DNA of 64,000 bases from positions 1 through 64,000 of IMG/VR virus record IMGVR_UViG_3300017963_000192. One strand, written 5' to 3'. Made by a program: the position numbers and the translations under genes. The stretch's first letter is position 1, and the number at the start of each line of letters is the position of its first letter. The notes below the pieces were generated by a model. The model was not told the origin of the DNA, searched no databases, and saw nothing but the letters and a program-made list of their open reading frames with translations. This document shows positions 1,858 through 28,613 of the stretch, one piece after another.

Positions 1858-1878
1858 AAAATTTTGAGGTGTTTTTTT

Positions 1879-2928
1879 ATGCCAGAAGAACCTAGCCTTT
1901 ACGGAATAATTAATTCAAATCGAACAGGGGATGATCTTTGGGGAAAAAATCAATTTAATAGTTCATTCCCTGTTTCTTTGGCATGCTACATGAGAGACAA
2001 TGACATTAATGCTATATATTTATCTTTGAATGAAAATCTTGAAGTTGTTGCAAATGAACTACATTTTAATGAAGTTTTTAATACATCTTTAGACTCAAAT
2101 GATATATATTTTTCTTTTGAATCAAAATTTGATCCGTATCAAGTTTATTCGTACGATGATATTTCAGGAATTGATCTTGTTGTTAAAGATACTTCAGGCA
2201 ACTTTTTACAACCACTGGAAATTAAATTAACCGTAATACCTGATAATAGTACATATCAAAACAATGAAAGTGAATGGGGTTCAGAAATTGTAATTAGACC
2301 TCCTACTACAAAATATTGTGGCTTAGGCATGGTACATTCCTGTATAAATCAATTAGAGGAAATAAGAAATATATTTGAACCTGTTTGCCATGATGTAAGA
2401 CACTGGGACAGTATTCCCGAAATAAATTCAAAGATGGATGATTTTATTGATGCATTAAATATTTTTGAAAGTCAGTATATTCAATTTCAAAAACCATTAT
2501 TATTACAGCCAATATGGAAAACGCAAGGTAAAAGCCCTTTATTAGCAGAGAATGCATTTGATATTTTTGTATGGAGTGATTTTGCTTTAAGCAGACTTTT
2601 TATTGATGCTTCAAACAATAGAAATGATAATGTAACTCGCTTGATGAGAAGTACTGCTCGTTTAACAAGATTTCTTTATGAAATAAGTACACGTAGAATT
2701 ACTCATTTGAATCATATTTACACAGAAATGACATTCGGTCATCAAACTGATAAAGAATTTTCAGTGAATGGTTCAAAAACTGTTCCATATATGAATCATG
2801 TTAGACGTTTCAATCCCATATTACCCCAAAGTGTTCTTTCTAATATTATTCTTGGTGGTGGTGAAGAAAAATTAAGTCCTGAAAGAAGATTTGACCAAAC
2901 GATATACTATACAATTGCAAATAGATAG
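1879..2928 (+). CDS. type II restriction endonuclease, HindVP/HgiDI-like
   Basis: SNR..LWGKNQFNSSFP, EIKLTVIPD, QPIWKT and LSPERRFD motifs; SD GAGGTG at 1866; divergent from the C5 MTase. Confidence 0.8.
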   Translation: MPEEPSLYGIINSNRTGDDLWGKNQFNSSFPVSLACYMRDNDINAIYLSLNENLEVVANELHFNEVFNTSLDSNDIYFSFESKFDPYQVYSYDDISGIDLVVKDTSGNFLQPLEIKLTVIPDNSTYQNNESEWGSEIVIRPPTTKYCGLGMVHSCINQLEEIRNIFEPVCHDVRHWDSIPEINSKMDDFIDALNIFESQYIQFQKPLLLQPIWKTQGKSPLLAENAFDIFVWSDFALSRLFIDASNNRNDNVTRLMRSTARLTRFLYEISTRRITHLNHIYTEMTFGHQTDKEFSVNGSKTVPYMNHVRRFNPILPQSVLSNIILGGGEEKLSPERRFDQTIYYTIANR

Positions 2929-2991
2929 TTTTTCAATCAGCCTCCGCCCTCCTTGGCTCCGGCTGACTAAATGTAAGAAGCTCGAAACTGC

Positions 2992-3070
2992 GCACAACAC
3001 GGCGTAATGCGTTGCGCTCCCTGCGGTCGCTTGGGCTTCACCACATTTTCACCTCCGCTATCGCTACGGT
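2992..3070 (+). mobile_element. 5' part of an attC-like site, truncated
   Basis: Starts GCACAAC (R''), then GC-rich CGCTCCCTGCGGTCGCTTGGGCTTCACCACATTT. No matching R' found downstream. Confidence 0.55.
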
Positions 3071-3916
3071 ATAATTTGTTATAATTAATTCATTGCCAAT
3101 TTTTCTGGTACCATTTTTACAATTTGAAGTATTATATAACCATGAACGCTCATATATCTGTGCCCAGTTGTATAGATCTCTAATTTCAGGACAGTCATCA
3201 TATGATAAGCAGAAATAAAAACTTGTTTTTTTTAAAATATTTGCTAAGCGATGGTGATCATTTTCCACGAAAGATTTTTGATATGCTCGTTTTTGGTCTG
3301 CATGATAGTACGGTGGGTCTAAATATATCAATACACTTTTACCTTTTTGAGGAGTGTTTATAACATACTCAAAATCTAAACTAGTAAGCTCAACATTATG
3401 AAGTTTGTTGCCAGCATTTTCAATAAATTTACCCCAATTTTGAGGCGGAGAGCTTTTACCTTCTTTATAACCCCAAGCCGGCTTATGTATAATGCCTGAG
3501 TATGAGGTACGATTTAAATAATAAATTTTAAATGCGTTTTCAAGTAATGATTCCGGTGAAAAATTTTTTATTTCGGCATGCCTTTCTTTTGTAGCAATTT
3601 CTTTTGAAATTAACTTCTGAAGTTTATGACGATTATCATTGCAAGCAATAATATTATAAACATCTATTATATCTTTATCAATATCATTGAGCCAATTATA
3701 TTGTGATTTATTTTTCCCAAAAAAAATATTTCCACCACCTACAAACGGTTCTCTAAATTCGTCATGTGGGACACAATTAATGAAAGGTAGAATATATTTA
3801 AGAGCATAAAATTTACCCCCTGGATATCTAAAAGGTGATGCAACAAAATCGCTTGACTTAATGTAACTACCATCAGAATCAAATTCGATTATATTATTGT
3901 GAAATATTTTATTCAT
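3038..3916 (-). CDS. D12-class (Dam family) N6-adenine DNA methyltransferase
   Basis: RYPGGK, EPFVGGG, NDID, LNRTSYSG, YLDPPY, ELIITNY. Confidence 0.92.
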   Translation of the reverse strand: MNKIFHNNIIEFDSDGSYIKSSDFVASPFRYPGGKFYALKYILPFINCVPHDEFREPFVGGGNIFFGKNKSQYNWLNDIDKDIIDVYNIIACNDNRHKLQKLISKEIATKERHAEIKNFSPESLLENAFKIYYLNRTSYSGIIHKPAWGYKEGKSSPPQNWGKFIENAGNKLHNVELTSLDFEYVINTPQKGKSVLIYLDPPYYHADQKRAYQKSFVENDHHRLANILKKTSFYFCLSYDDCPEIRDLYNWAQIYERSWLYNTSNCKNGTRKIGNELIITNYTVAIAEVKMW

Positions 3917-6063: not shown

Positions 6064-6645
6064 TCAACACCATACCCTACTTATCGGACTTTTCTCATAT
6101 GTAATCATAATTCTTGAATCTTTAGGTGGTTTTTTTGTTAAATGTAAAACATCTCCATTAGTAGTGCGAATCCCACCAAAACTAGAATCAATTATTTTAA
6201 ATTCATTTTCAGTTATAATACATCCATTAATATATACTGCTCTAACATTTTTAACAACGTATTCTAAATAATAATTACTACTTCTAAAAAATCCTGATCC
6301 AGTAGTGAATGTTTCGGTTCTTATTTCTTTTTTATTACCATCCTTATAACTATCCTTTTCAACACCATCACTAATTAATACACACCTTTCATTAGAAGTC
6401 CAAGATTTCTTTTTCTTCTTCTTTATATATTTGGGGCGACCACAATATTCACAAACATCGGAATTCAAACTATAAGGTGCTCCACAACTCTTGCATTCAG
6501 TAAGGTCATATTTCTCTTTAGATTCTTTATGTTGTACTTGGGCATCAACATAAGCCTTGTTTACTGCGGGGTATAATTCTGGAGGACTTAATTCAACAAA
6601 TCCCGTAGATGTTGAAAGAATTTTTAAAAGATCTGCTTGAGTCAT
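6064..6645 (-). CDS. Zn-ribbon hypothetical protein
   Basis: CKSCGA..CEYCG. Confidence 0.65.
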   Translation of the reverse strand: MTQADLLKILSTSTGFVELSPPELYPAVNKAYVDAQVQHKESKEKYDLTECKSCGAPYSLNSDVCEYCGRPKYIKKKKKKSWTSNERCVLISDGVEKDSYKDGNKKEIRTETFTTGSGFFRSSNYYLEYVVKNVRAVYINGCIITENEFKIIDSSFGGIRTTNGDVLHLTKKPPKDSRIMITYEKSPISRVWC

Positions 6646-6655
6646 TTTGTTCTCC

Positions 6656-7953
6656 TTAAATATCCGTAATTTTTCTATGATGTCTGTATTCTAGTTCTCT
6701 TTTTTTTATTTCGTCCTCATCTAAAATAATTCCTTGAAAAACTTTTTTAACTCGCCACCCATTTTCCCATTTACCATAATCATCTTTTATTTTTAACAAT
6801 TTATCTTGTTTAGCAAATTTTTCTGGTATCCAGGAAATTACATTTATTATTCCGTATTTACTCGTTTTTATTAATTTACATTGTTTATACTTCATCTTCT
6901 TCCTCATCATAAAATTCTAAAGCTTCTTTATAGCAATTGGGACAAAGACTATAACAATCACCGTGATAATCTTCGTAAGGAAAGAGGTGTTCTCCACAAA
7001 AATACCCCTCACAATGAAATTCTCCACTACCATGCATAGGCCCACATTTATACGCTAAACCTCTGTCAATCTTGTTATTGCATCCCTCATAGTCACATAC
7101 AGCTTCTATACCATATCCTATATCTCTTCCTTTAGAATCTTTTCCACAATAAGCCCAACCCATTATTTTATTCTCCAATTTAGAAATCTCGTATCCGAGA
7201 CGGTTATTAATCATCATCAAAGATAATTGTTTCTATTGGTTTTAATCTTAAACCATAATATGTTTTACATTTATTACATGTAACTTCTATTACAAGACTA
7301 TCGTTATCAATATACATAGATTCACCATCTAAAAACAAGTCAGTTGATCCACACCCACATTTGAATCCATTCTTCATATATGGCTCTAACCATTCATTAC
7401 TAGGCATTATGTATCTTTATCTCCTATTAATCTAAAAACATAATCTTTCTTTTGCACTTCTTTTTCAAGTGATTTTTCTAAATCAATTATTTCTTCTTCA
7501 AGACCATTAACATAAGAATCCTTTCTATGTATAATTTTAATTATCTCTTTTCTTGTATATCCTAATGATAGCAACAGTCTAAAAAAATCGTCCATTATTC
7601 GGGATAATGGTACTTTTTTATTTCTTTTTATACATATAGTTTTATTTTCATCTTCTATGATTATTTTCATATTATTCATCACTGTTTATAAATTTGTCTT
7701 TGTTCCATCTATCTCGATAGGATCCTATTTCGAATTTTTTAATAAAACCTTTAGGATCAAGATGTAATAGCATAGAATCAGCGTGTGTAACTTTAACGAC
7801 TTGTTCTAATTGATCTATTCTATTAAGAATATCTTCTTGTTTTTCCATTATTTGAATATTTTCAAAATGGATTTGAAGATGCTTTAAAATCAAGAGAGAC
7901 ACCATTATTGTTATTCCTAACATTAAAAAGAAGTAGCTTTTTACAGATGTCAT
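6656..7953 (-). CDS. five small overlapping phage ORFs (6656-6910, 6885-7220, 7207-7407, 7407-7682, 7672-7953)
   Basis: Overlapping stop/start codons; two are Cys-rich and one has a TM helix. Confidence 0.6.
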
Positions 7954-9623: not shown

Positions 9624-10073
9624 CTATTTTCTCCAATAAGCATAATGTTTCCTAATACAAAGATAGTCCATATTTTCTTCATTTTGTTTAGCTTCAACTT
9701 CGAAAATTATTTCTCTATAAGAAATCCAGAAAATATCTTTGAAAAATTGTAGCCAAGTTTTTTCTTTAGATTTACTTGGTATCATTTTAAATAAATTTAT
9801 AACATATCTTATTAAAAAATGACCTACATAAAGAATGTACCATAAAATAATGCCCCATTCTCGTGCTTGTGCAAAATGAATACATTCGTGATTTTCTATA
9901 ATGTTTCCATAATCAGTATTTAAATATTCTTGTTTTATTAGAAACAAGAATCCTAAATGAGATTGAGCACTTACACCACAGGCAGTTAAATACTTATCAG
10001 TTATGTCTCCAGATATTGTAATAAATTTCATCACAGCACCTCCTTGCTTAAAATTTCTACTGCTATTTGACAT
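9624..10073 (-). CDS. hypothetical protein with metallopeptidase-like HExxH
   Basis: IENHECIHFAQARE; hydrophobic segment. Confidence 0.55.
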   Translation of the reverse strand: MSNSSRNFKQGGAVMKFITISGDITDKYLTACGVSAQSHLGFLFLIKQEYLNTDYGNIIENHECIHFAQAREWGIILWYILYVGHFLIRYVINLFKMIPSKSKEKTWLQFFKDIFWISYREIIFEVEAKQNEENMDYLCIRKHYAYWRK

Positions 10074-16533: not shown

Positions 16534-16761
16534 TCATTTCTTTTTCCTCCTGTTTAATATTTTTTTAACCAATTCCCACACATCTTTGTCTCTATCGTGG
16601 TTCTTGATTATAACTTCCTCTTTACCATCTATGATTGCTCTGTAGTTACCAAAGTCTGGACGATGTTTACAATCTTTCGTATTGATTATTTCAATCGCTG
16701 CTATTTGTTCTTTTCTATACTCACTTCCGTGAGGATGGAATTCTACTATTATTTTTAACAT
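16534..16761 (-). CDS. hypothetical phage protein
   Basis: 75 aa, SD GGGG. Confidence 0.55.
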   Translation of the reverse strand: MLKIIVEFHPHGSEYRKEQIAAIEIINTKDCKHRPDFGNYRAIIDGKEEVIIKNHDRDKDVWELVKKILNRRKKK

Positions 16762-16844
16762 AATAACCCCCTTATGTTAAAAATTAACAATATTCTTAAC
16801 ATATTTAAGTTTGTGTCTCCGACATTGATGTCGGTCAGTTAATG

Positions 16845-17515
16845 CCTGCCCGAAGGGATTCGAACCTACATCTACCAACTTAGCATCCAGCATTATGTTT
16901 CCATAACCACCTTAAAGGCTTGCTGGCTGGACCATATCTTCATCATCACAGATGGAGGGCGTATGGCCTCTACGCATCCCAATTATCGATGGTTTGCTCG
17001 GAATTGTCGTGAAATCTTTTAAAGATTCTTACGATGTTCTCCGAGACAGCCCTCTCCAGTTCTATGGTTCTTTCATTCCTTAATGCATAGCTAAAAGATG
17101 TTCCGCACGATTTAGAACAAGCCCTAAATTTTTTACCAAATCTTGTAGAAAGTTTATTAAAGGGTAATTCAAATAACTTTTTACAATTAGGACATTTTAG
17201 TAATACCATCTTTTTACCTTGTTCTTTACTGCGGAGTTTGTTATGTTCTTTACTATTCATAACTTCAAGATTTTCTATTCTATTATCAAACCTATCTCCA
17301 TTTTTGTGATGCACTATTTCATTAGAATTGAGAAGTCTTTTTAAATGATTTTCAATTATTATTCTATGTAACAAAACATATCCATACTTGCTTGCATATG
17401 GATGATTCTTTACAACAGCATAAAGATAATCACCTTTATTGATAATCTTCTCAATTTTCCACATAGAACGCTCCTTATTTGAAGGATGGTGCTCATCCAC
17501 TTGAGCTACTAGGAC
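16845..17515 (-). tRNA. trnR: tRNA-Arg(UCU) split by a group I intron (exon 1 17515-17482, exon 2 16883-16845); 3' end does not match the 5' end
   Basis: Exon 1 GTCCTAG TA GCTC AAGTGGAT GAGC A CCATC CTT; exon 2 CTAA GTTGG TAGAT GTAGG TTCGAAT CCCTT CGGGCAG G; joined loop CT-TCT-AA; A20. Confidence 0.8.
16884..17481 (-). ncRNA. group I self-splicing intron (598 nt) with HNH ORF in L2
   Basis: P1 CUU/GAG; P2 GTTCTATG/CATAGAAC; P3 GAGGGC/GCCCTC; P4 CTCGGA/TCCGAG; P7 GGCCATA/TATGGTC with J8/7 AAGA; terminal G at 16884. Confidence 0.9.
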
Positions 17516-17776
17516 ATTATTTTCTTCAAATCTTTTTAATTGCTCTAATTTGTTTGCTAAATCTCTTTCCTCCTTAATTTTACGTAATCTATCTATTTTC
17601 GATTTTTTTATTTTATTTAAATAATCTGATTTTAATTTATGATGTTCTGGTAATTTTTGTAACCACAAACTAACAGAACTTTTAGATACATTTAACTCTT
17701 TTGCTATTTTATTAATAGTAAATCCTTGTTTTCTTAAATTAATAGCTTTATTTTTTTCTATTATCTTCTTTTTCAT
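16970..17776 (-). CDS. HTH + HNH homing endonuclease fusion; intron-internal HNH start at 17464 (MWKIEK, 164 aa)
   Basis: N-terminal HTH GFTINKIAKELNVSKSSVSLW; LLHR..VHHKNGDRFDNRIENL; C-terminal CPNC..CSKSC. Confidence 0.85.
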   Translation of the reverse strand: MKKKIIEKNKAINLRKQGFTINKIAKELNVSKSSVSLWLQKLPEHHKLKSDYLNKIKKSKIDRLRKIKEERDLANKLEQLKRFEENNVLVAQVDEHHPSNKERSMWKIEKIINKGDYLYAVVKNHPYASKYGYVLLHRIIIENHLKRLLNSNEIVHHKNGDRFDNRIENLEVMNSKEHNKLRSKEQGKKMVLLKCPNCKKLFELPFNKLSTRFGKKFRACSKSCGTSFSYALRNERTIELERAVSENIVRIFKRFHDNSEQTIDNWDA

Positions 17777-17794
17777 TTATTCCTCCAATAAATG

Positions 17795-17868
17795 TGACTC
17801 CACTGAGAATCGAACTCAGTACCTCGACCTTAAAAGGGTCTTGCTGCTACCAATTGAGCTATGGAGTC
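17795..17868 (-). tRNA. trnK: tRNA-Lys(UUU) copy 1
   Basis: Acceptor GACTCCA/TGGAGTC, loop CTTTTAA, T-arm CTGAG TTCGATT CTCAG. Confidence 0.85.
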
Positions 17869-18756: not shown

Positions 18757-18774
18757 ATCTATAACCTCCTTATG

Positions 18775-18848
18775 TGCGTCCTCTGAGAATCGAACTCAGT
18801 ACCTCGACCTTAAAAGGGTCTTGCTGCTACCAATTGAGCTATGGACGC
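18775..18848 (-). tRNA. trnK: tRNA-Lys(UUU) copy 2 (different acceptor stem)
   Basis: Body identical to copy 1; acceptor GCGTCCA/AGGACGC. Confidence 0.8.
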
Positions 18849-19335: not shown

Positions 19336-19411
19336 TGGCGAGAGTGGGAGTCGAACCCACAGATTACAGAGTTTTTGGGACTCCAGCCTTTTCCAATTTA
19401 GCCATCTCGCC
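19336..19411 (-). tRNA. trnL: atypical tRNA-Leu(CAA): C33, 7-nt variable region
   Basis: GGAGT CCCAAAA ACTCT; Leu-type D-arm; A73. Confidence 0.6.
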
Positions 19412-19769
19412 TTAATTTGTTTCTTTTTGCTTGGTATGATCTATGACCTTCTCTACAAAGATCACATCTACATCCATGAGCATATTTGCTATGTGTTCCA
19501 TGATTTTCTTTTTTAAGTAAATTATGATGATAGTCACTATGACATTTTCTACACCATACAACACATTTTTTTAATTCTTTTTCTCTTCTCTCTTCAGACC
19601 AAGACCATATTTTATGATCTTCCTTTTCCTTTGGATTTTTATGATGTAATTCCAACTTTTCTATCGAACCACATTTTTCACATACTTTGTCTTTAAAAAA
19701 TTCTAATCTTCTTTTCCTTACCCATAATTTAGCATATTCTCTTTGTTTGTTAACATCCTTATAAGACAT
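19398..19769 (-). CDS. free-standing HNH endonuclease
   Basis: CEKCGS..LELHHK..CVVWCRKCH; C-terminal HGT..Y..GCRCDLC. Confidence 0.85.
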   Translation of the reverse strand: MSYKDVNKQREYAKLWVRKRRLEFFKDKVCEKCGSIEKLELHHKNPKEKEDHKIWSWSEERREKELKKCVVWCRKCHSDYHHNLLKKENHGTHSKYAHGCRCDLCREGHRSYQAKRNKLRRDG

Positions 19770-22618: not shown

Positions 22619-23293
22619 TTACTCGCTTAATTCTTCTATGCTATAAATTTCCATATCTTCATATTTATCAGGCTTCAACCCAGAAGATGTTAAAGCGTTC
22701 CATAAAGCTTCTGCTTCAATTTCTAATTCTTTTCTTGATGTACTTTCACTCTCAAAAATAAATCTGTATTCTTCTTGAGGTTCATCAACACGCATCAGTT
22801 CTTCAACTTCATCGTCTATTTTATAGCCCTTTCTCTCCAGCATTTCTGCTAAATCAGAAAGTTTACTAAAAAATTGTTTCATCGTTCCCGCAGTTTTCGT
22901 TACTTGTTCAGAGGTTAGCCCTAGTTCTTTTGCAATTTCTATTATTCTATTTCTATAAGGCTTGTATATTTCGTAGGCTTTTTTATATCTCTTTATCTTA
23001 TCTCTTAATTCTGTGTTTTCTTTAGAGAAATTGTCTATTATCTCGTTCTTTTCTTTTAATAACTCTTTGTATTTCTCTAATCTTTTCTTGCTTTTTAATT
23101 TACTCTCTTTATAACTTTCTTCTTTTATTTCTTCTATTTGTTTATAATGATTATCACAAATCTCTTTTATTTTATTTTCATAATATTCTCTTAACTCATC
23201 TTCTTTTTCTTTATAAATCTTCTCAACTTTTGTTTTTTGAGCACTTAAAATCTTATCAAGTTTTTCTTTAGTCATCCGATAAGTTTTCGACAT
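22619..23293 (-). CDS. coiled-coil hypothetical protein
   Basis: 224 aa, K/E-rich heptads; SD AAGGAG. Confidence 0.7.
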   Translation of the reverse strand: MSKTYRMTKEKLDKILSAQKTKVEKIYKEKEDELREYYENKIKEICDNHYKQIEEIKEESYKESKLKSKKRLEKYKELLKEKNEIIDNFSKENTELRDKIKRYKKAYEIYKPYRNRIIEIAKELGLTSEQVTKTAGTMKQFFSKLSDLAEMLERKGYKIDDEVEELMRVDEPQEEYRFIFESESTSRKELEIEAEALWNALTSSGLKPDKYEDMEIYSIEELSE

Positions 23294-23368
23294 ATTCTTA
23301 TCTCCTTAATATAACATTAATAATTATATAAAAATATGTCTCATTTAAAGTCAATAAAAAAATACAAT

Positions 23369-23439
23369 TTGCGGGTGACAGAATTGAACTGTCCTGGGCG
23401 GCTTATGAGACCGTTGAGTAACCACTACTCTAACCCGCA
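23369..23439 (-). tRNA. trnM: tRNA-Met(CAU), initiator-like
   Basis: ACGGT CTCATAA GCCGC; fMet-like GCGGG acceptor, A11:U24, TTCAA T-loop; lacks the 3 G-C anticodon pairs. Confidence 0.75.
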
Positions 23440-23442
23440 ATG

Positions 23443-23716
23443 TGTCAGTTTCTAATAGTGAGGATTCATCGGGTAGCTAATCCCTCCACCACACGTTCGG
23501 CTTCACTGACAAGCTCGGTTGCACAGAGGAGTCCTGTTTAGGACACTGGTGTCCGTCCTCTCTTTACCTATAAAGGGTTAATTTAAAAGTTTTTGATATC
23601 GCTGTGCCAACGATAAAAGAGTTATATAGTACCCTATTTCTCTTGAATATTCAATGACTCTAGTTGTCTCAGTTCCTTTCGGTCACTGTTTAGAATATTC
23701 TGCTATATAACCCAAG
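23443..23716 (-). ncRNA. unidentified multi-domain structured RNA
   Basis: Several long stems, a kink-turn motif and no ORF; see findings. Confidence 0.6.
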
Positions 23717-23719
23717 ATG

Positions 23720-23771
23720 AAGAGGCGGAAAGGATCGAAAACCCATTGTACTGCCATTGTACTACGCCTCT
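23720..23771 (-). pseudogene. internally deleted tRNA (Gln-like)
   Basis: Acceptor AGAGGCG/CGCCTCT and D-arm GTAC AATGGCA GTAC intact; anticodon-to-T-arm segment reduced to 19 nt. Confidence 0.65.
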
Positions 23772-23953
23772 ATATTATTTAATTTCTCAATAATTTCCTT
23801 TTTGTTTTCTACAATTACTTGTGATAATTTTAATATCCCATAAAAACCTAATCTGTCTAAATCATTATGGTAATTTCTATAAAGCTTGTCAAGAAATTTA
23901 GCGAATTCTTTGTCTTTATCGCTAAAGAAATACTCCCAATTTTGTTTACTCAT
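23762..23953 (-). CDS. hypothetical phage protein
   Basis: 63 aa, SD GGGGG. Confidence 0.55.
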   Translation of the reverse strand: MSKQNWEYFFSDKDKEFAKFLDKLYRNYHNDLDRLGFYGILKLSQVIVENKKEIIEKLNNIEA

Positions 23954-23967
23954 AAAAACCCCCTATT

Positions 23968-24040
23968 TGACGCTAGGGGGAGTTGAACCCGCCATTACAG
24001 AGTTGAAAGCCCTGTGGCCTAACCATTAGCCGATAGCGCC
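23968..24040 (-). tRNA. trnE: tRNA-Glu(UUC)
   Basis: CAGGG CTTTCAA CTCTG. Confidence 0.88.
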
Positions 24041-26199: not shown

Positions 26200-26901
26200 T
26201 TAATCCTCTTCTATATAATACTCTGGATTTTCAACATCCCTTTTTTCTAATTTATGATCAAAAGTAGTATAGTATGGTTTAACTTCTTTTTCAAAAGGTA
26301 ATTCAATTTCACCGATTAAGTTCAAATATTTATCTAAAACTTTATTTTTAATTTCTCTTATCTCATTAGGAGTCATATCGTAAGTTCTAATAAAGGGTTC
26401 TCCGTATTCTTGTTCATAAGCCCATTCAAAGAGTTTATCTATATCTTGATATTTGAAATATATATCCATCCAACCTTTAGGATATTCTTCAACTTTACTA
26501 TTGTTAACAACACCCCCGAAGTATTCAATTAGGTAAATATAAAAAAATCTATTGGGGTCAAGTGAATCTGATTCTCTGCTTATAATATAATGAATAATTT
26601 CTTCTTCGTTTTCTCCCGCTTCTGATTTAAAAGCTTCAATTTCACTCTTAAATGCTTTAACAACTTCTGCATTTATCATAGATTCTGTAATATCGTCTTC
26701 TTTTGTTAAGCCGTACTGCGTTTTTAACATAAGAGGTGTCATACCCTTAGTATAGTAATCTTTCCAGGCATTTTTGAAATCGTTTTTGAATTTTTCATTA
26801 TTTAGTAACGATTCTATAGCGTTATTGAAATTAGAGATAGTTATTTTTTTATTACTCTTTTTTAATAATTCATTTATATTAATTATTTTTCTAAAATTCA
26901 T
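26200..26901 (-). CDS. hypothetical protein with MNF tag
   Basis: Start set at MNFRK (TAATG overlap with the upstream stop). Confidence 0.7.
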   Translation of the reverse strand: MNFRKIININELLKKSNKKITISNFNNAIESLLNNEKFKNDFKNAWKDYYTKGMTPLMLKTQYGLTKEDDITESMINAEVVKAFKSEIEAFKSEAGENEEEIIHYIISRESDSLDPNRFFYIYLIEYFGGVVNNSKVEEYPKGWMDIYFKYQDIDKLFEWAYEQEYGEPFIRTYDMTPNEIREIKNKVLDKYLNLIGEIELPFEKEVKPYYTTFDHKLEKRDVENPEYYIEED

Positions 26902-28613
26902 TATTCTCCCCAAATCTCATTAAGGATTTCATATATTAAATAAATTTGATCATCGTTAAATTTCCATCTTACATTTACGTTTTTATCTGCCCATTCCATT
27001 GGAGTATTTGTACCTTTTTCTTCACTCATAGCACACCAATCGGTACAATTATGTAAAAAAATTCCTGATGTGATTGCAAAGTTATGATGAACGTCAACTG
27101 TCATATCAAAAACATCTTTTTTTATGTCTTGTTTTTTTATGCTTATTATTTTATGGTTAACTGTATTATTTTTATGGGTTTTCATATGATTTCCTAAACC
27201 ACCAGAGTTTCCGCAAATTTTACCACAAACAGAACATTCTATTGGCGTAGTGGCGTTTTTAATAGATGTTTTTCTCATTTTTTCTTTGTATTTAGGGTTT
27301 TTCCAAATTTCTGAATTTCGGTTGGATTGTTTTTGTCTCCAATCAGGTATTACTTCGTGAAAACTTTTTATATGATTGGACAATGCTCCAACATTTCCAA
27401 AAATTTTACCACAATAATTACATTTTTTACTTTTTTTATTTAATTCAATCATATTTTTAGACGCTGTTTTTTTGTGTTTTTTTGATTTGTTGTAATTAGT
27501 TAAATTTTTTGGTCCAGTTGTTTTACCTATAATTCCAACTCTTGTTTTTTGTTTTTTTCTAAATGCAGGATTTTCCCATAATTTTTTAAGAACAGTACTT
27601 CCTACTTTTTTTTGTTTTTCAGAATGAATTTTGTAGTGGTTTTCTTTAGTCATTATTTCTAAATTAGAGGGGTCATTGTTTTTTTTATTATTTTCATCCA
27701 TAAAATTTTTATGGTGACAAACTAATTGGTTTGTTCCAAATTTTTTTGTATAATATTGATAACCACCAAAATACTCATCTACCATCATTCTATGTGTTAA
27801 CTTCCATTTATTGACATTTAAGTTGTATATTTGTTCATAACCATCTTTATCTTTCCTATATAGAGGCATAAGACTGTCTCCAACAACTAAATCTTTAACT
27901 TCTTTATAAGTACCATCTCTCATCATAAATTTGTGATTATCAGTACAATCTACATATAAATCGTTATCTAGCGTGATTCTATATACCGTTGCATTTTTTT
28001 TAGTTTTTCTTACACTATGCCCTTTTCCAGGTACTATTTTACCTTCTGTTGTACAAGAATATACCCAAAATTCTTTTTCATTTACTAAATCTTTTATTTG
28101 TGTCTCTTTTCCATTTAATAAGGAAATTTTAGTATCTCCTGTTAAACACATTTCAGCTATATCTAAATCTTCCATAGCAGTAGCATCTATAATCTCATCT
28201 GGTATTTCATCTCTGTTTTCTCTATTAATTTTACCTTTATTCTTACAATGAAATTCAGGGTGATGTCTATTATTATTAACGTGATGTTCTGTAGCATTGT
28301 TCATTAATTCTCTAACATCATCTGAAATATCAAAAGTGACGCCATCGTCTTTACACTTATAATCCCATGTTACTAAAATATAAGGTTCAAGTTCTGGATC
28401 TTTATATTTGCTTTGGTCGTGATCTTCCCCTCTTTCGATTATACCCTCAAATCTATTACCAAATCTATTGTGAATTCTTTTACAGTATTTCTTTGTTAAG
28501 TCAATATGGTTTTTAGTTCTTTTATCAAAGAAATCTTTCATACCTTGAGTAATATTAAGTCCCATTGCTTGTCTAATCAATTCGTTTATGCTATCTGCTA
28601 ATTTAAAATTCAT
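26901..28613 (-). CDS. DUF5662/HD-like protein with MNF tag, interrupted by an intein
   Basis: HDQSK, HH..NRHHPE, DIAEM|CTDW. Confidence 0.75.
   Translation of the reverse strand: MNFKLADSINELIRQAMGLNITQGMKDFFDKRTKNHIDLTKKYCKRIHNRFGNRFEGIIERGEDHDQSKYKDPELEPYILVTWDYKCKDDGVTFDISDDVRELMNNATEHHVNNNRHHPEFHCKNKGKINRENRDEIPDEIIDATAMEDLDIAEMCLTGDTKISLLNGKETQIKDLVNEKEFWVYSCTTEGKIVPGKGHSVRKTKKNATVYRITLDNDLYVDCTDNHKFMMRDGTYKEVKDLVVGDSLMPLYRKDKDGYEQIYNLNVNKWKLTHRMMVDEYFGGYQYYTKKFGTNQLVCHHKNFMDENNKKNNDPSNLEIMTKENHYKIHSEKQKKVGSTVLKKLWENPAFRKKQKTRVGIIGKTTGPKNLTNYNKSKKHKKTASKNMIELNKKSKKCNYCGKIFGNVGALSNHIKSFHEVIPDWRQKQSNRNSEIWKNPKYKEKMRKTSIKNATTPIECSVCGKICGNSGGLGNHMKTHKNNTVNHKIISIKKQDIKKDVFDMTVDVHHNFAITSGIFLHNCTDWCAMSEEKGTNTPMEWADKNVNVRWKFNDDQIYLIYEILNEIWGE
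27048..28148 (-). mobile_element. 367-aa intein with HNH domain and two C2H2 zinc fingers
   Basis: CLTGDT start; DMTVDVHHNF..LHN|C end; THR..VCHHKN..NN..NL. Confidence 0.92.

What the first reader, a model, noticed from the sequence alone, without database searches (positions are those of the whole stretch)
23443..23771. Candidate novel structured RNA embedded in the tRNA operon
Seen (minus strand), about 270 nt with no ORF: an 11-bp stem (23713-23703/23629-23619) enclosing GAATATTC/GAATATTC and a GAAA-capped hairpin; an AGAGGA/TCCTCT-closed domain; and a 68-nt module closed by GTCAGT/ACTGAC. That module has a kink-turn pattern (GUGGA-GGG..CCC-GAU-GAA, as in SAM-I P2) with a palindromic loop UAGCUA, and ends A-CAT like the neighbouring tRNAs. 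It follows a 52-nt tRNA remnant lacking its anticodon arm. Established: GOLLD and ROOL RNAs occur among phage tRNAs. Inference: an undescribed RNA processed with the tRNAs and possibly dimerising through kissing loops.
Basis: partly seen in the sequence, partly recalled or inferred. Interest (0 to 1): 0.72.

Follow-up and report, generated by a model that had tools for sequence, protein, structure and literature searches.

The report
Orphan spacer after a broken tRNA
A 279-base non-coding stretch in the tRNA cluster of an uncultured marine jumbo phage follows a broken glutamine-tRNA gene; its proposed RNA folds are mostly no better than chance and it has no relatives anywhere searched, so a new structured RNA is unproven.

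Summary
The stretch has no ORF over 35 codons and no Rfam match apart from a 52-nt tRNA hit.

That hit is a pseudogene of tRNA-Gln(UUG).

Support for a structured RNA in the remaining 279 nt is weak:
- Folding energies of the two 3' modules are ordinary (z -0.8 and -0.6). Only the 11-bp-stem module stands out (z -2.8), and that stem has pair probability below 0.1 in context.
- The kink-turn pattern is real but occurs in 6.5% of shuffles.
- The 3' 143 nt are unusually G+C-rich (50-57% against 31%).

No homologue was found in GenBank phages, IMG/VR, JGI metagenomes or GTDB genomes, nor in five relatives (capsid 68-86% identical). Both flanking ORFs are orphans. Three samples carry identical sequence and no RNA run was listed, so neither covariation nor transcription could be tested.

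Most likely (0.45) it is a transcribed spacer in a decaying, endonuclease-ridden tRNA cluster. A lineage-specific stable RNA like T4 species I/II remains possible (about 0.28).

The parts
23968..24040 (-). tRNA-Glu(UUC), last intact tRNA upstream. Its 3' end forms a terminator-like hairpin plus T-run (23980-23959) that overlaps the ribosome-binding site of ORF63.
23762..23953 (-). ORF63, an orphan 63-codon ORF. Its TAG stop lies inside the first bases of the tRNA remnant. It contains the best sigma-70-like promoter match of the 8-kb cluster (TTGACA-17-CATAAT, 23892-23864).
   Evidence: No homologue among 5.8 billion proteins.
23720..23771 (-). Pseudogene of tRNA-Gln(UUG). Acceptor stem, D arm and anticodon arm are present, with one extra base in the anticodon loop. 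Variable region and T arm are deleted.
   Evidence: RF00005 30 bits against a gathering score of 29, with 20 model positions skipped at the T arm. Significant similarity to clade tRNAs. Acceptor stem and anticodon arm match tRNA-Gln of relative G002.
23584..23719 (-). A+T-rich 5' half of the spacer (about 33% G+C). It holds the 11-bp inverted repeat 23713-23703 / 23629-23619, two palindromic GAATATTC (23700-23693, 23652-23645), a GAAA-capped hairpin (23688-23670) and an 8-bp hairpin (23615-23597).
23441..23583 (-). G+C-rich 3' half of the spacer (50-57% G+C). It holds AGAGGA/UCCUCU (23561-23556 / 23530-23525) and the hairpin GUCC-UAAACA-GGAC (23544-23531). A 16-mer at 23555-23540 is identical to part of a terminator at G000:118531-118546.
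23441..23511 (-). 71-nt module closed by UGUCAGU/ACUGACA, with an internal kink-turn-like pattern (GA 23486-23485, GGG 23484-23482, loop 23481-23474, CCC 23473-23471, bulge GAU 23470-23468, GA 23467-23466). Its closing stem ends two bases (CA) before tRNA-Met.
   Evidence: No similarity to any of 90 clade tRNAs.
23368..23440 (-). tRNA-Met(CAU), intact. RNase P cleavage at its 5' end would define the 3' end of any RNA made from the spacer (inference).
22619..23293 (-). ORF224, an orphan downstream gene with a strong Shine-Dalgarno sequence.
   Evidence: No homologue among 5.8 billion proteins.

Best explanation
The stretch is a non-coding spacer in a decaying tRNA cluster of an uncultured 218-kb marine phage. 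It is not a gene for a dedicated structured RNA.

Its first 52 nt are the wreck of the phage's tRNA-Gln(UUG) gene. An internal deletion removed the variable region and T arm, and one base was inserted in the anticodon loop.

The following 279 nt are lineage-specific filler of mixed origin. The A+T-rich half carries palindromes. The G+C-rich half includes a 16-nt piece identical to half of a terminator hairpin elsewhere in the genome.

By analogy with the T4 tRNA cluster, the whole stretch is probably transcribed together with tRNA-Met, detached when RNase P cuts the 5' end of tRNA-Met, and then degraded.

Shown: the pseudogene, the lack of homologues, the chance-level fold statistics for the 3' modules and the whole, and the composition. 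Inferred: co-transcription, RNase P release, absence of an independent function, and homing-endonuclease damage as the cause of the T-arm deletion.
For: 1. The remnant is a tRNA-Gln pseudogene. Rfam aligns acceptor stem, D arm and anticodon arm and skips the T arm. Its acceptor AGAGGCG/CGCCUCU matches AGAGGCA/UGCCUCU of relative G002's tRNA-Gln with a compensated seventh pair. Its anticodon arm GGGUUUUCGAUCC matches GGGUUUUGAUCC plus one inserted base.
2. This phage has no intact tRNA-Gln and only 14 tRNAs. Relatives have 19-28, and in the four whose tRNA clusters were read tRNA-Gln lies in the same cluster as Glu and Ser.
3. The cluster is full of homing endonuclease genes. HNH ORFs lie at 16970-17776 and 19398-19769, and the latter is the only cluster ORF shared with relatives. 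Other tRNA scraps exist: a T-loop-like GGTTCGAATCC at about 16860 and a 19-bit tRNA hit at G000:124660-124714. T4's SegB endonuclease, encoded inside the T4 tRNA cluster, recognises the T-psi-C-coding sequence (PMC2330249). That is the part missing here.
4. The 3' modules and the whole fold no better than shuffles. The kink-turn pattern is at chance level. The helices change with context.
5. Nothing similar was found in five relatives, including the complete genome G002, or in four public collections.
6. The 16-mer at 23555-23540 equals the 5' arm plus part of the loop of a bidirectional terminator at 118.5 kb, but without the 3' arm. It is therefore a fragment. About 4% of shuffles share a 16-mer with the genome.
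Against: - The 3' 143 nt hold 50-57% G+C, four standard deviations above the genome's 100-nt mean. Under A+T-biased mutation, old junk should have drifted towards 31%. So this half is either recent or maintained.
- It has no residual similarity to any of 90 tRNAs of the clade (p about 0.95), so it is not simply a point-mutated tRNA.
- The genome has only 15 non-coding gaps of 150 nt or more, so a 321-nt gap is unusual.
- The 71-nt module is tRNA-sized, closed by a 7-bp stem with pair probability 0.98 in isolation, and its stem ends two bases before tRNA-Met, much as neighbouring tRNAs abut each other.
- T4 rnaD, an accepted stable RNA, also folds no better than shuffles (z -0.83). A weak z-score is therefore not proof of absence.
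- The absence of homologues is uninformative, because every small ORF of this cluster is also unique to this phage.
Confidence: 0.45

Rival explanations
1. One or two lineage-specific small stable RNAs, most plausibly within the G+C-rich 3' 143 nt. They would be co-transcribed with tRNA-Met and released by RNase P at the tRNA's 5' end, like species I and II RNAs (rnaC, rnaD) of phage T4. The kink-turn would recruit an L7Ae-family protein, and the palindromic loop could allow dimers. This is essentially the reader's reading.
For: - tRNA-like G+C content in a 31% genome: one of nine segments at or above 52% per 100 nt, and three of the other eight hold intact tRNA genes.
- It directly abuts tRNA-Met.
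- The closing stem has probability 0.98 in isolation and 0.77 in context.
- The sequence fits the kink-turn consensus (C stem, 3-nt bulge, tandem G.A, A.G at the third position).
- T4 places 119- and 139-nt stable RNAs right after tRNA-Arg in its tRNA cluster. Neither has an Rfam family, and rnaD has z -0.83. The T4 primary transcript yields eight tRNAs plus both RNAs (PMC2330249).
Against: - No homologue anywhere, so no covariation can be shown.
- z-scores of -0.09 to -0.84 for the 3' modules.
- The kink-turn pattern occurs in 6.5% of shuffles, and its C stem has pair probability 0.15.
- There is no T arm or acceptor mimic such as rnaC has, and no similarity to rnaC or rnaD.
- Five of the nine G+C-rich segments do not overlap intact tRNA genes (this one, a restriction-modification spacer and three inside ORFs), so high G+C does not by itself mark an RNA gene.
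- No RNA data exist.
Confidence: 0.28
2. A DNA-level regulatory region. The 11-bp inverted repeat and the two palindromic GAATATTC boxes 48 bp apart would be protein-binding sites, such as operators or a homing or recombination site. They would sit next to a weak promoter that serves tRNA-Met and ORF224.
For: - The palindromes and the inverted repeat lie in the A+T-rich half. The 102-nt segment containing them is the only part with a significant fold score (z -2.76), which an inverted repeat in DNA would also produce.
- A TTGAAT-17-TACTAT motif overlaps the second GAATATTC box (read).
- The region lies between two transcription-unit candidates.
Against: - GAATATTC occurs 15 times in the genome, against about 9 expected from composition, with no clustering elsewhere.
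- Promoter-like sites in the cluster are no more frequent than in shuffles (37 against 35), and the motif here scores 8 of 12, below the scan's threshold.
- No DNA-binding protein gene is linked.
- This reading does not explain the G+C-rich half.
Confidence: 0.1
3. A scrambled descendant of the pair of long tRNA-like genes (124-143 nt) that relatives carry in or near their tRNA clusters, next to the Glu/Ser/Gln/Ala block in G002 and G005. The GAAA hairpin at 23688-23670 would be a relic of their conserved insert.
For: - Relatives G001, G002 and G005 each have two such genes. In G002 and G005 they lie next to the Glu/Ser/Gln/Ala tRNAs, where this phage has the remnant and spacer.
- There is an 11-nt identity (TGACCGAAAGG) and a 22-of-28 local alignment to the G005 copies, with p about 0.02-0.03.
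Against: - A covariance model of the insert (R3) scores the four training copies at 72-80 bits. It finds nothing in the window at E<=10, and reaches only 4.2 bits (E 1.5) when the search is limited to the 401-nt region.
- The nhmmer E-value is 22 genome-wide.
- The inner stem of the family is broken in this sequence.
- The D-arm and T-arm frames of the family are absent.
Confidence: 0.07

Closest known systems
Phage T4 species I and species II RNAs (rnaC 139 nt, rnaD 119 nt)
   Same: Both are non-tRNA RNA-sized stretches, about 260-280 nt in total, inside a phage tRNA cluster. Both directly abut a tRNA gene on the same strand, have no ORF and have no Rfam family. In T4 they come from the same primary transcript as the tRNAs (PMC2330249). 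Their function remains unknown (own knowledge).
   Different: T4's RNAs are experimentally detected and follow the last tRNA. rnaC ends in a canonical T arm and acceptor-like stem and folds very stably (z -4.6). Here there is no expression evidence, no T-arm mimic, the stretch precedes a tRNA, and there is no sequence similarity.
tRNA pseudogenes and turnover in phage tRNA clusters driven by homing endonucleases (T4 SegB)
   Same: Endonuclease genes sit among the tRNA genes. SegB recognises the T-psi-C-coding sequence, and tRNA content differs between related phages (PMC2330249). Here HNH genes sit in the cluster, the tRNA-Gln remnant lacks exactly the T arm, and tRNA content differs widely between relatives.
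   Different: The endonucleases here are HNH rather than GIY-YIG, and their targets are unknown. The link between them and the deletion is an inference.
GOLLD and ROOL RNAs
   Same: Phage or prophage RNAs of unknown function, often next to tRNA islands (PMC12286853).
   Different: They are far larger (GOLLD often over 800 nt; ROOL several hundred nt, own knowledge), widely conserved, and have Rfam models (own knowledge). No Rfam family other than tRNA matches this region at E<=10.
Kink-turn motifs (Kt-7, SAM-I riboswitch P2, box C/D RNAs)
   Same: At sequence level: a G-C closed C stem, a 3-nt bulge, tandem G.A/A.G, and A.G at the third position as in Kt-7 (read; consensus from own knowledge).
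   Different: There is no conservation, no binding protein identified and no structural data. The pattern occurs at chance frequency. As a box C/D RNA it fails: box C would be GUGAAGC (5 of 7), D' is unrecognisable, and the terminal stem has a mismatch next to the turn.

Membership tests
tRNA (RF00005), for 23771-23720 | Score at or above the Rfam gathering threshold | tested here: met
   30.0 bits against 29, only just
tRNA (RF00005), for 23771-23720 | Acceptor stem, D arm and anticodon arm | tested here: met
   7-bp acceptor stem, 4-bp D stem and 4 of 5 anticodon-stem pairs. The loop matches the tRNA-Gln type plus one inserted base.
tRNA (RF00005), for 23771-23720 | T arm with a T-psi-C loop, needed for a functional tRNA | tested here: not met
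   20 model positions are replaced by 1 nt. It is therefore a pseudogene, not a tRNA.
tRNA, for the 279-nt remainder (decayed tRNA genes) | Residual similarity to tRNAs or a cloverleaf | tested here: not met
   No RF00005 hit at E<=10. ARAGORN finds candidates only at 60% threshold, and these are unconvincing. Best local alignments to 90 clade tRNAs are at null level (p 0.63-0.97).
Any Rfam 15 family (GOLLD, ROOL, group I intron, YrlA, ribozymes, riboswitches) | Covariance-model match | tested here: not met
   Nothing at gathering score. Nothing at E<=10 within 23441-23719 on either strand with permissive filters.
Y RNA-like (YrlA) module | Linked Ro60 (TROVE) protein gene | tested here: not met
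   No TROVE (PF05731) or RtcB (PF01139) match in the 217.7-kb record
Kink-turn | C stem, 3-nt bulge, tandem sheared G.A pairs and NC stem, in sequence | tested here: met
   23486-23466 fits, but the same descriptor hits 6.5% of shuffles.
Kink-turn | Conservation of the G.A pairs, or binding by an L7Ae-family protein | not testable with these tools
   No homologues and no binding data
T4-type stable RNA of a tRNA operon (rnaC/rnaD) | Location inside a phage tRNA cluster, same strand, abutting a tRNA | tested here: met
T4-type stable RNA of a tRNA operon (rnaC/rnaD) | Detected as a discrete stable RNA processed from the tRNA precursor | not testable with these tools
   No RNA run was listed. The phage is uncultured.
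T4-type stable RNA of a tRNA operon (rnaC/rnaD) | Sequence or structural similarity to rnaC or rnaD (T-arm/acceptor mimic at the 3' end) | tested here: not met
   Local alignment at null level. No GGTTCGAATCC-type T arm in 23441-23719.
Long tRNA-like genes of related phages (model R3) | Match to the conserved insert (8-bp stem plus UUG-[3 bp + GNRA]-ACG hairpin) | tested here: not met
   Training copies score 72-80 bits. Nothing from the finding's interval at E<=10 (the window's only hit, 12.4 bits, lies at 1508-1603). 4.2 bits (E 1.5) within the 401-nt region.

The most novel reading that the evidence does not exclude
The G+C-rich 3' 143 nt (23583-23441) encode a lineage-specific stable RNA. 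It would carry a kink-turn, be cut out of a phage tRNA-Met precursor by RNase P, bind a host L7Ae-family protein and perhaps pair with itself through the UAGCUA loop. That would make it a new, unrelated counterpart of the still-unexplained T4 species I/II RNAs.
Probability: 0.2. Interest if true: 0.5.

Novelty: new member of a known kind. Interest (0 to 1): 0.25.

Why it matters
If the spacer is junk, this case mainly documents how phage tRNA clusters decay. It shows a tRNA-Gln gene caught with exactly its T arm deleted, in a cluster populated by homing endonucleases, while relatives keep 19-28 tRNAs.

If the G+C-rich half is a real RNA, it would be a second, independent example of non-tRNA stable RNAs riding in phage tRNA operons. 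The T4 examples of that class have had no known function for fifty years. With a single sequence and an uncultured phage, however, it offers no handle on that question yet.

The more promising lead for new RNA biology lies in the relatives. They carry a conserved pair of 124-143-nt tRNA-like genes with a structured insert, in four copies in place of the anticodon loop.

Tried and rejected
- **Rfam.** Gathering and E<=10 scans gave only tRNA.
- **Direct similarity.** blastn against GenBank phages, near and distant, gave nothing. An exact 29-mer and three flanking proteins in IMG/VR gave only a 99.99% identical contig.
- **Flanking ORFs.** ORF224 and ORF63 against 5.8 billion proteins matched only themselves.
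- **Public runs.** Three DNA samples hold the same phage with zero differences across 4 kb. No RNA run was listed.
- **Relatives found through the capsid protein**. blastn and single-sequence covariance models R1 (3' half) and R2 (5' half) against five relatives' records or tRNA clusters gave no match. There is no synteny to define an empty site.
- **Degenerate pattern scans.** Kink-turn hairpin and AGAGGA-module patterns over IMG/VR, JGI metagenomes and GTDB genomes, filtered with R1, returned only chance hits and the source contig.
- **Decayed-tRNA hypothesis for the 279 nt.** Loose ARAGORN settings and alignment to 90 clade tRNAs gave no support.
- **Homology to the relatives' long tRNA-like inserts.** A suggestive 11-mer was not supported by nhmmer or model R3.
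- **Other known classes.** T4 rnaC/rnaD: no similarity. Y RNA idea: no Ro60 or RtcB gene. Hammerhead and box C/D readings, checked by eye, fail on core positions.
- **Stop-codon recoding.** An amber-suppressor tRNA is present, but the standard code fits and ORF63 is not extended.
- **Gene-fragment idea for the G+C-rich half.** No open frame exceeds 35 codons.
- **Group I intron near 16.9 kb.** A 14.7-bit partial hit was not confirmed in a wider scan.

Full report
**Context.** The window is the first 64 kb of a 217.7-kb IMG/VR virus record with 31% G+C and an estimated completeness of 88%. The same phage is present in marine sediment and seawater metagenomes. Its genes include an HK97-type major head protein, a tail sheath and a baseplate wedge protein. 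It uses the standard genetic code, and ORFs of at least 100 codons cover 90% of the genome. Thirteen tRNA genes lie on the minus strand between 17.8 and 24.3 kb, interspersed with small orphan ORFs and HNH homing-endonuclease genes. The finding lies between tRNA-Glu plus ORF63 upstream and tRNA-Met downstream.

No frame has an open stretch longer than 35 codons.

Rfam gives one match, to tRNA, at 23771-23720 (30 bits against a gathering score of 29). Nothing else appears inside 23441-23719 at E<=10.

Statistically the picture is thin:
- Against dinucleotide shuffles the whole 279 nt has z = -1.06, the 71-nt module -0.84, the AGAGGA module -0.56 and the 3' 135 nt -0.09.
- Only the 102-nt segment with the 11-bp stem is unusual, at z = -2.76 with 1 of 200 shuffles as good.
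- In the partition function the 11-bp stem is a minority structure (p 0.06-0.10).
- The kink-turn C stem has p 0.15.
- AGAGGA/UCCUCU drops from 0.82 to 0.04 once the upstream remnant is attached, because the remnant's own AGAGG and CCUCU strands compete for pairing.
- GUCAGU/ACUGAC, the GAAUAUUC pair and the GAAA hairpin are robust.

A descriptor for hairpin kink-turns finds the site at 23486-23466. The same descriptor finds 0.12 such sites per 279 nt across this genome, and at least one in 6.5% of shuffles.

**The tRNA remnant.** Rfam instead aligns the acceptor stem, D arm and an anticodon-type arm, and skips 20 positions at the variable region and T arm.

Against 90 tRNAs collected from this phage and four relatives, the remnant scores significantly. 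Its best local scores are to tRNA-His, tRNA-Gln and tRNA-Glu and do not discriminate between them. The acceptor stem and anticodon arm, however, match tRNA-Gln(UUG) of relative G002. The acceptor AGAGGCG/CGCCUCU corresponds to AGAGGCA/UGCCUCU, and the anticodon arm GGGUUUUCGAUCC corresponds to GGGUUUUGAUCC.

This phage has no intact tRNA-Gln. The four relatives whose clusters were read all have one in the same cluster as Glu and Ser. The remnant is therefore a tRNA-Gln pseudogene with a T-arm deletion and a one-base insertion in the anticodon loop.

**Composition.** The spacer has two halves. The segment 23719-23584 is about 33% G+C. The segment 23583-23441 is 50-57%.

Only nine segments of the genome reach 52% G+C over 100 nt. 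Three hold intact tRNA genes and one is this segment. The others are a spacer between restriction-modification genes and three patches inside protein genes.

High G+C is therefore suggestive of an RNA gene or of recently acquired DNA, but it is not diagnostic. The genome has only 15 non-coding gaps of 150 nt or more, and this one is among the three richest in G+C.

**Search for relatives of the element.**
- Nothing was found in GenBank phages.
- IMG/VR holds one other contig, 99.99% identical.
- The Logan contigs of three samples are identical across 4 kb.
- ORF224 and ORF63 have no homologue among 5.8 billion proteins.

The major head protein does have many relatives, at 63-89% identity. That led to 27 IMG/VR loci. 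These include G001 (86%), the complete genome G002 (85%), G003 (74%), G004 (71%), G005 (68%) and G006 (68%).

None of the five searched has a blastn match to the region. Single-sequence covariance models of the 3' half (R1) and 5' half (R2) found nothing in their tRNA clusters, and R1 found nothing in four whole records. Apart from an HNH endonuclease, none of the cluster's ORFs is shared, and synteny is not preserved.

Degenerate pattern scans for the kink-turn hairpin and the AGAGGA module over IMG/VR, JGI metagenomes and 185,579 GTDB genomes gave the number of hits expected by chance. After filtering with R1, only the source phage remained.

Covariation therefore cannot be assessed. Absence from relatives says little, because the whole accessory content of this cluster has turned over.

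**Alternative identities tested.**
- Decayed tRNAs: no residual similarity for the 279 nt.
- T4 species I/II RNAs: same kind of location, but no similarity and no T-arm mimic.
- Y RNA: no Ro60 or RtcB gene.
- The relatives' long tRNA-like genes: see the section on by-products. A shared 11-mer and local alignments with p about 0.02-0.03 were not borne out by nhmmer (E = 22) or by covariance model R3. R3 scores its four training copies at 72-80 bits but only 4.2 bits in the region.
- One further clue: a 16-mer at 23555-23540 is identical to the 5' arm and part of the loop of a bidirectional terminator at 118.5 kb, without the 3' arm. About 4% of shuffles share a 16-mer with the genome. This fits a patchwork origin for the G+C-rich half.

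**Most likely mechanism.** I commit, at 0.45, to a transcribed spacer in a decaying tRNA cluster.

T4 sets the precedent. One primary transcript there carries eight tRNAs, a homing-endonuclease mRNA and two extra RNAs. The endonuclease SegB recognises the T-psi-C-coding sequence (PMC2330249).

Here the phage has 14 tRNAs where relatives have 19-28. It carries HNH genes in the cluster, a tRNA-Gln gene missing exactly its T arm, and other tRNA scraps.

The best promoter-like site of the cluster (TTGACA-17-CATAAT, 23892-23864) lies 93 nt upstream of the remnant. Promoter-like sites overall are no more frequent than in shuffles, so this is only a lead. Co-transcription, RNase P release and degradation are inferences.

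The main rival, at 0.28, is a lineage-specific stable RNA in the G+C-rich half. It is favoured by composition, by the tRNA-sized 7-bp-closed module that abuts tRNA-Met, and by the fact that T4 rnaD also has an unremarkable fold score. A DNA-level regulatory reading of the palindromes gets 0.10. Descent from the long tRNA-like pair gets 0.07.

**Comparison with known systems, and novelty.** The 52-nt element is a member of the tRNA family only as a pseudogene, because the T arm was tested and is absent. The remainder belongs to no Rfam family.

In position it resembles T4 species I/II RNAs and, more loosely, GOLLD and ROOL, which are often near tRNA islands (PMC12286853). It shares no defining structural feature with any of them. 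The kink-turn reading meets the sequence consensus but not the tests that would make it meaningful.

Under either of the two leading explanations this is a new instance of a known kind of thing. Interest is low (0.25) unless expression or homologues turn up.

**By-products.** Relatives G001, G002 and G005 each carry two 124-143-nt genes that Rfam scores as tRNA or tRNA-like (27-53 bits; the G002 copy at L056:5718-5855 scores best as tRNA-Sec). In the G001 and G005 copies a 50-70-nt insert replaces the anticodon loop. In G002 it expands the variable arm.

The G001 and G005 inserts share an 8-bp stem and a UUG-[3 bp + GNRA]-ACG hairpin whose 3-bp stem covaries: ACA/UGU, GCA/UGC, ACC/GGU, ACU/GGU. 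A strict pattern for this insert finds it only in those two IMG/VR records.

This looks like a better candidate for a new structured RNA than the finding itself.

Noticed in passing
L054:16874-16997(-) and 16658-16782(-) (G001); L058:9990-10115(-) and 9862-9985(-) (G005); L056:5718-5855(+) and 6077-6219(+) (G002): Related jumbo phages each carry a pair of 124-143-nt tRNA-like genes with acceptor stem, D arm and T arm. Five score 44-53 bits on RF00005; L056:5718-5855 scores 27 bits there and 35.6 as tRNA-Sec. In G001 and G005 a 50-70-nt structured insert replaces the anticodon loop. In G002 it sits in the variable arm. The G001/G005 inserts share an 8-bp stem and a UUG-[3 bp + GNRA]-ACG hairpin with compensatory changes. 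There is no other Rfam match. A strict pattern finds it only in these two IMG/VR records. Function is unknown.
   Followed up: partly
G000:C1:123400-123473(-), outside the window: An amber-suppressor-type tRNA (anticodon CUA, called 'Pyl' by ARAGORN) is present, although ORF statistics show standard stop-codon use. A 761-nt non-coding gap at 123944-124704 with a 19-bit tRNA scrap lies beside it.
   Followed up: partly
window 1864-3916: A convergent restriction-modification pair: a HindVP-family endonuclease (PF09519, E 1e-100) and a D12-class N6-adenine methyltransferase. They are separated by a 109-nt spacer with up to 61% G+C, the most G+C-rich spot of the genome, which has no Rfam match.
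   Followed up: partly
window 26901-28613(-): A DUF5662 protein is interrupted by an intein that carries an HNH/zinc-finger endonuclease. Homologues in G001 and G006 are intein-less, with one 188-193-residue open frame matching both exteins.
   Followed up: partly
window 16762-16969(-): A 208-nt non-coding, G+C-rich (41%, peak 50%) gap lies just downstream of the HNH gene 16970-17776, at the 3' end of the tRNA cluster. It contains a T-loop-like GGTTCGAATCC without a matching stem, which looks like another tRNA scrap. A 14.7-bit partial group I intron hit was not confirmed in a wider scan.
   Followed up: partly
window 23555-23540 and G000:C1:118531-118546: An identical 16-mer is shared between the AGAGGA module and the 5' arm plus loop of a bidirectional terminator between convergent ORFs at 118.5 kb. 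About 4% of shuffles share a 16-mer with the genome.
   Followed up: yes
window 23980-23864(-): A terminator-like hairpin plus T-run is built from the 3' end of tRNA-Glu and overlaps the ribosome-binding site and start of ORF63. The best sigma-70-like promoter match of the cluster (11 of 12) lies inside ORF63. Together these raise doubt about whether ORF63 is a real gene.
   Followed up: no
window 19398-19769(-); L056:4236-4580 and 6379-6720; L053:1214-1456; L057:9489-9755; L059:2367-2597: A 123-residue HNH endonuclease is one of only two cluster ORFs with any match in relatives (49-58% identity; the other is the HNH domain of ORF 16970-17776). It is present in several copies among their tRNA genes, consistent with endonuclease-driven turnover of these clusters.
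   Followed up: partly
proteins P0065 and P0085 (capsid homologues): Capsid homologues of this phage clade have been binned into a Methanofastidiosum (archaeal) MAG and a Clostridia MAG, so the host domain is unsettled. This matters for reading promoters and kink-turn binding proteins.
   Followed up: no
window 17794-17868(-) and 18774-18848(-): Two copies of tRNA-Lys(UUU) are 96% identical, and four tRNA-Leu isoacceptors lie within 800 nt. The phage nevertheless lacks tRNAs for Gln, His, Trp, Gly, Pro, Thr, Cys, Tyr, Val, Arg and Asn that relatives encode.
   Followed up: no
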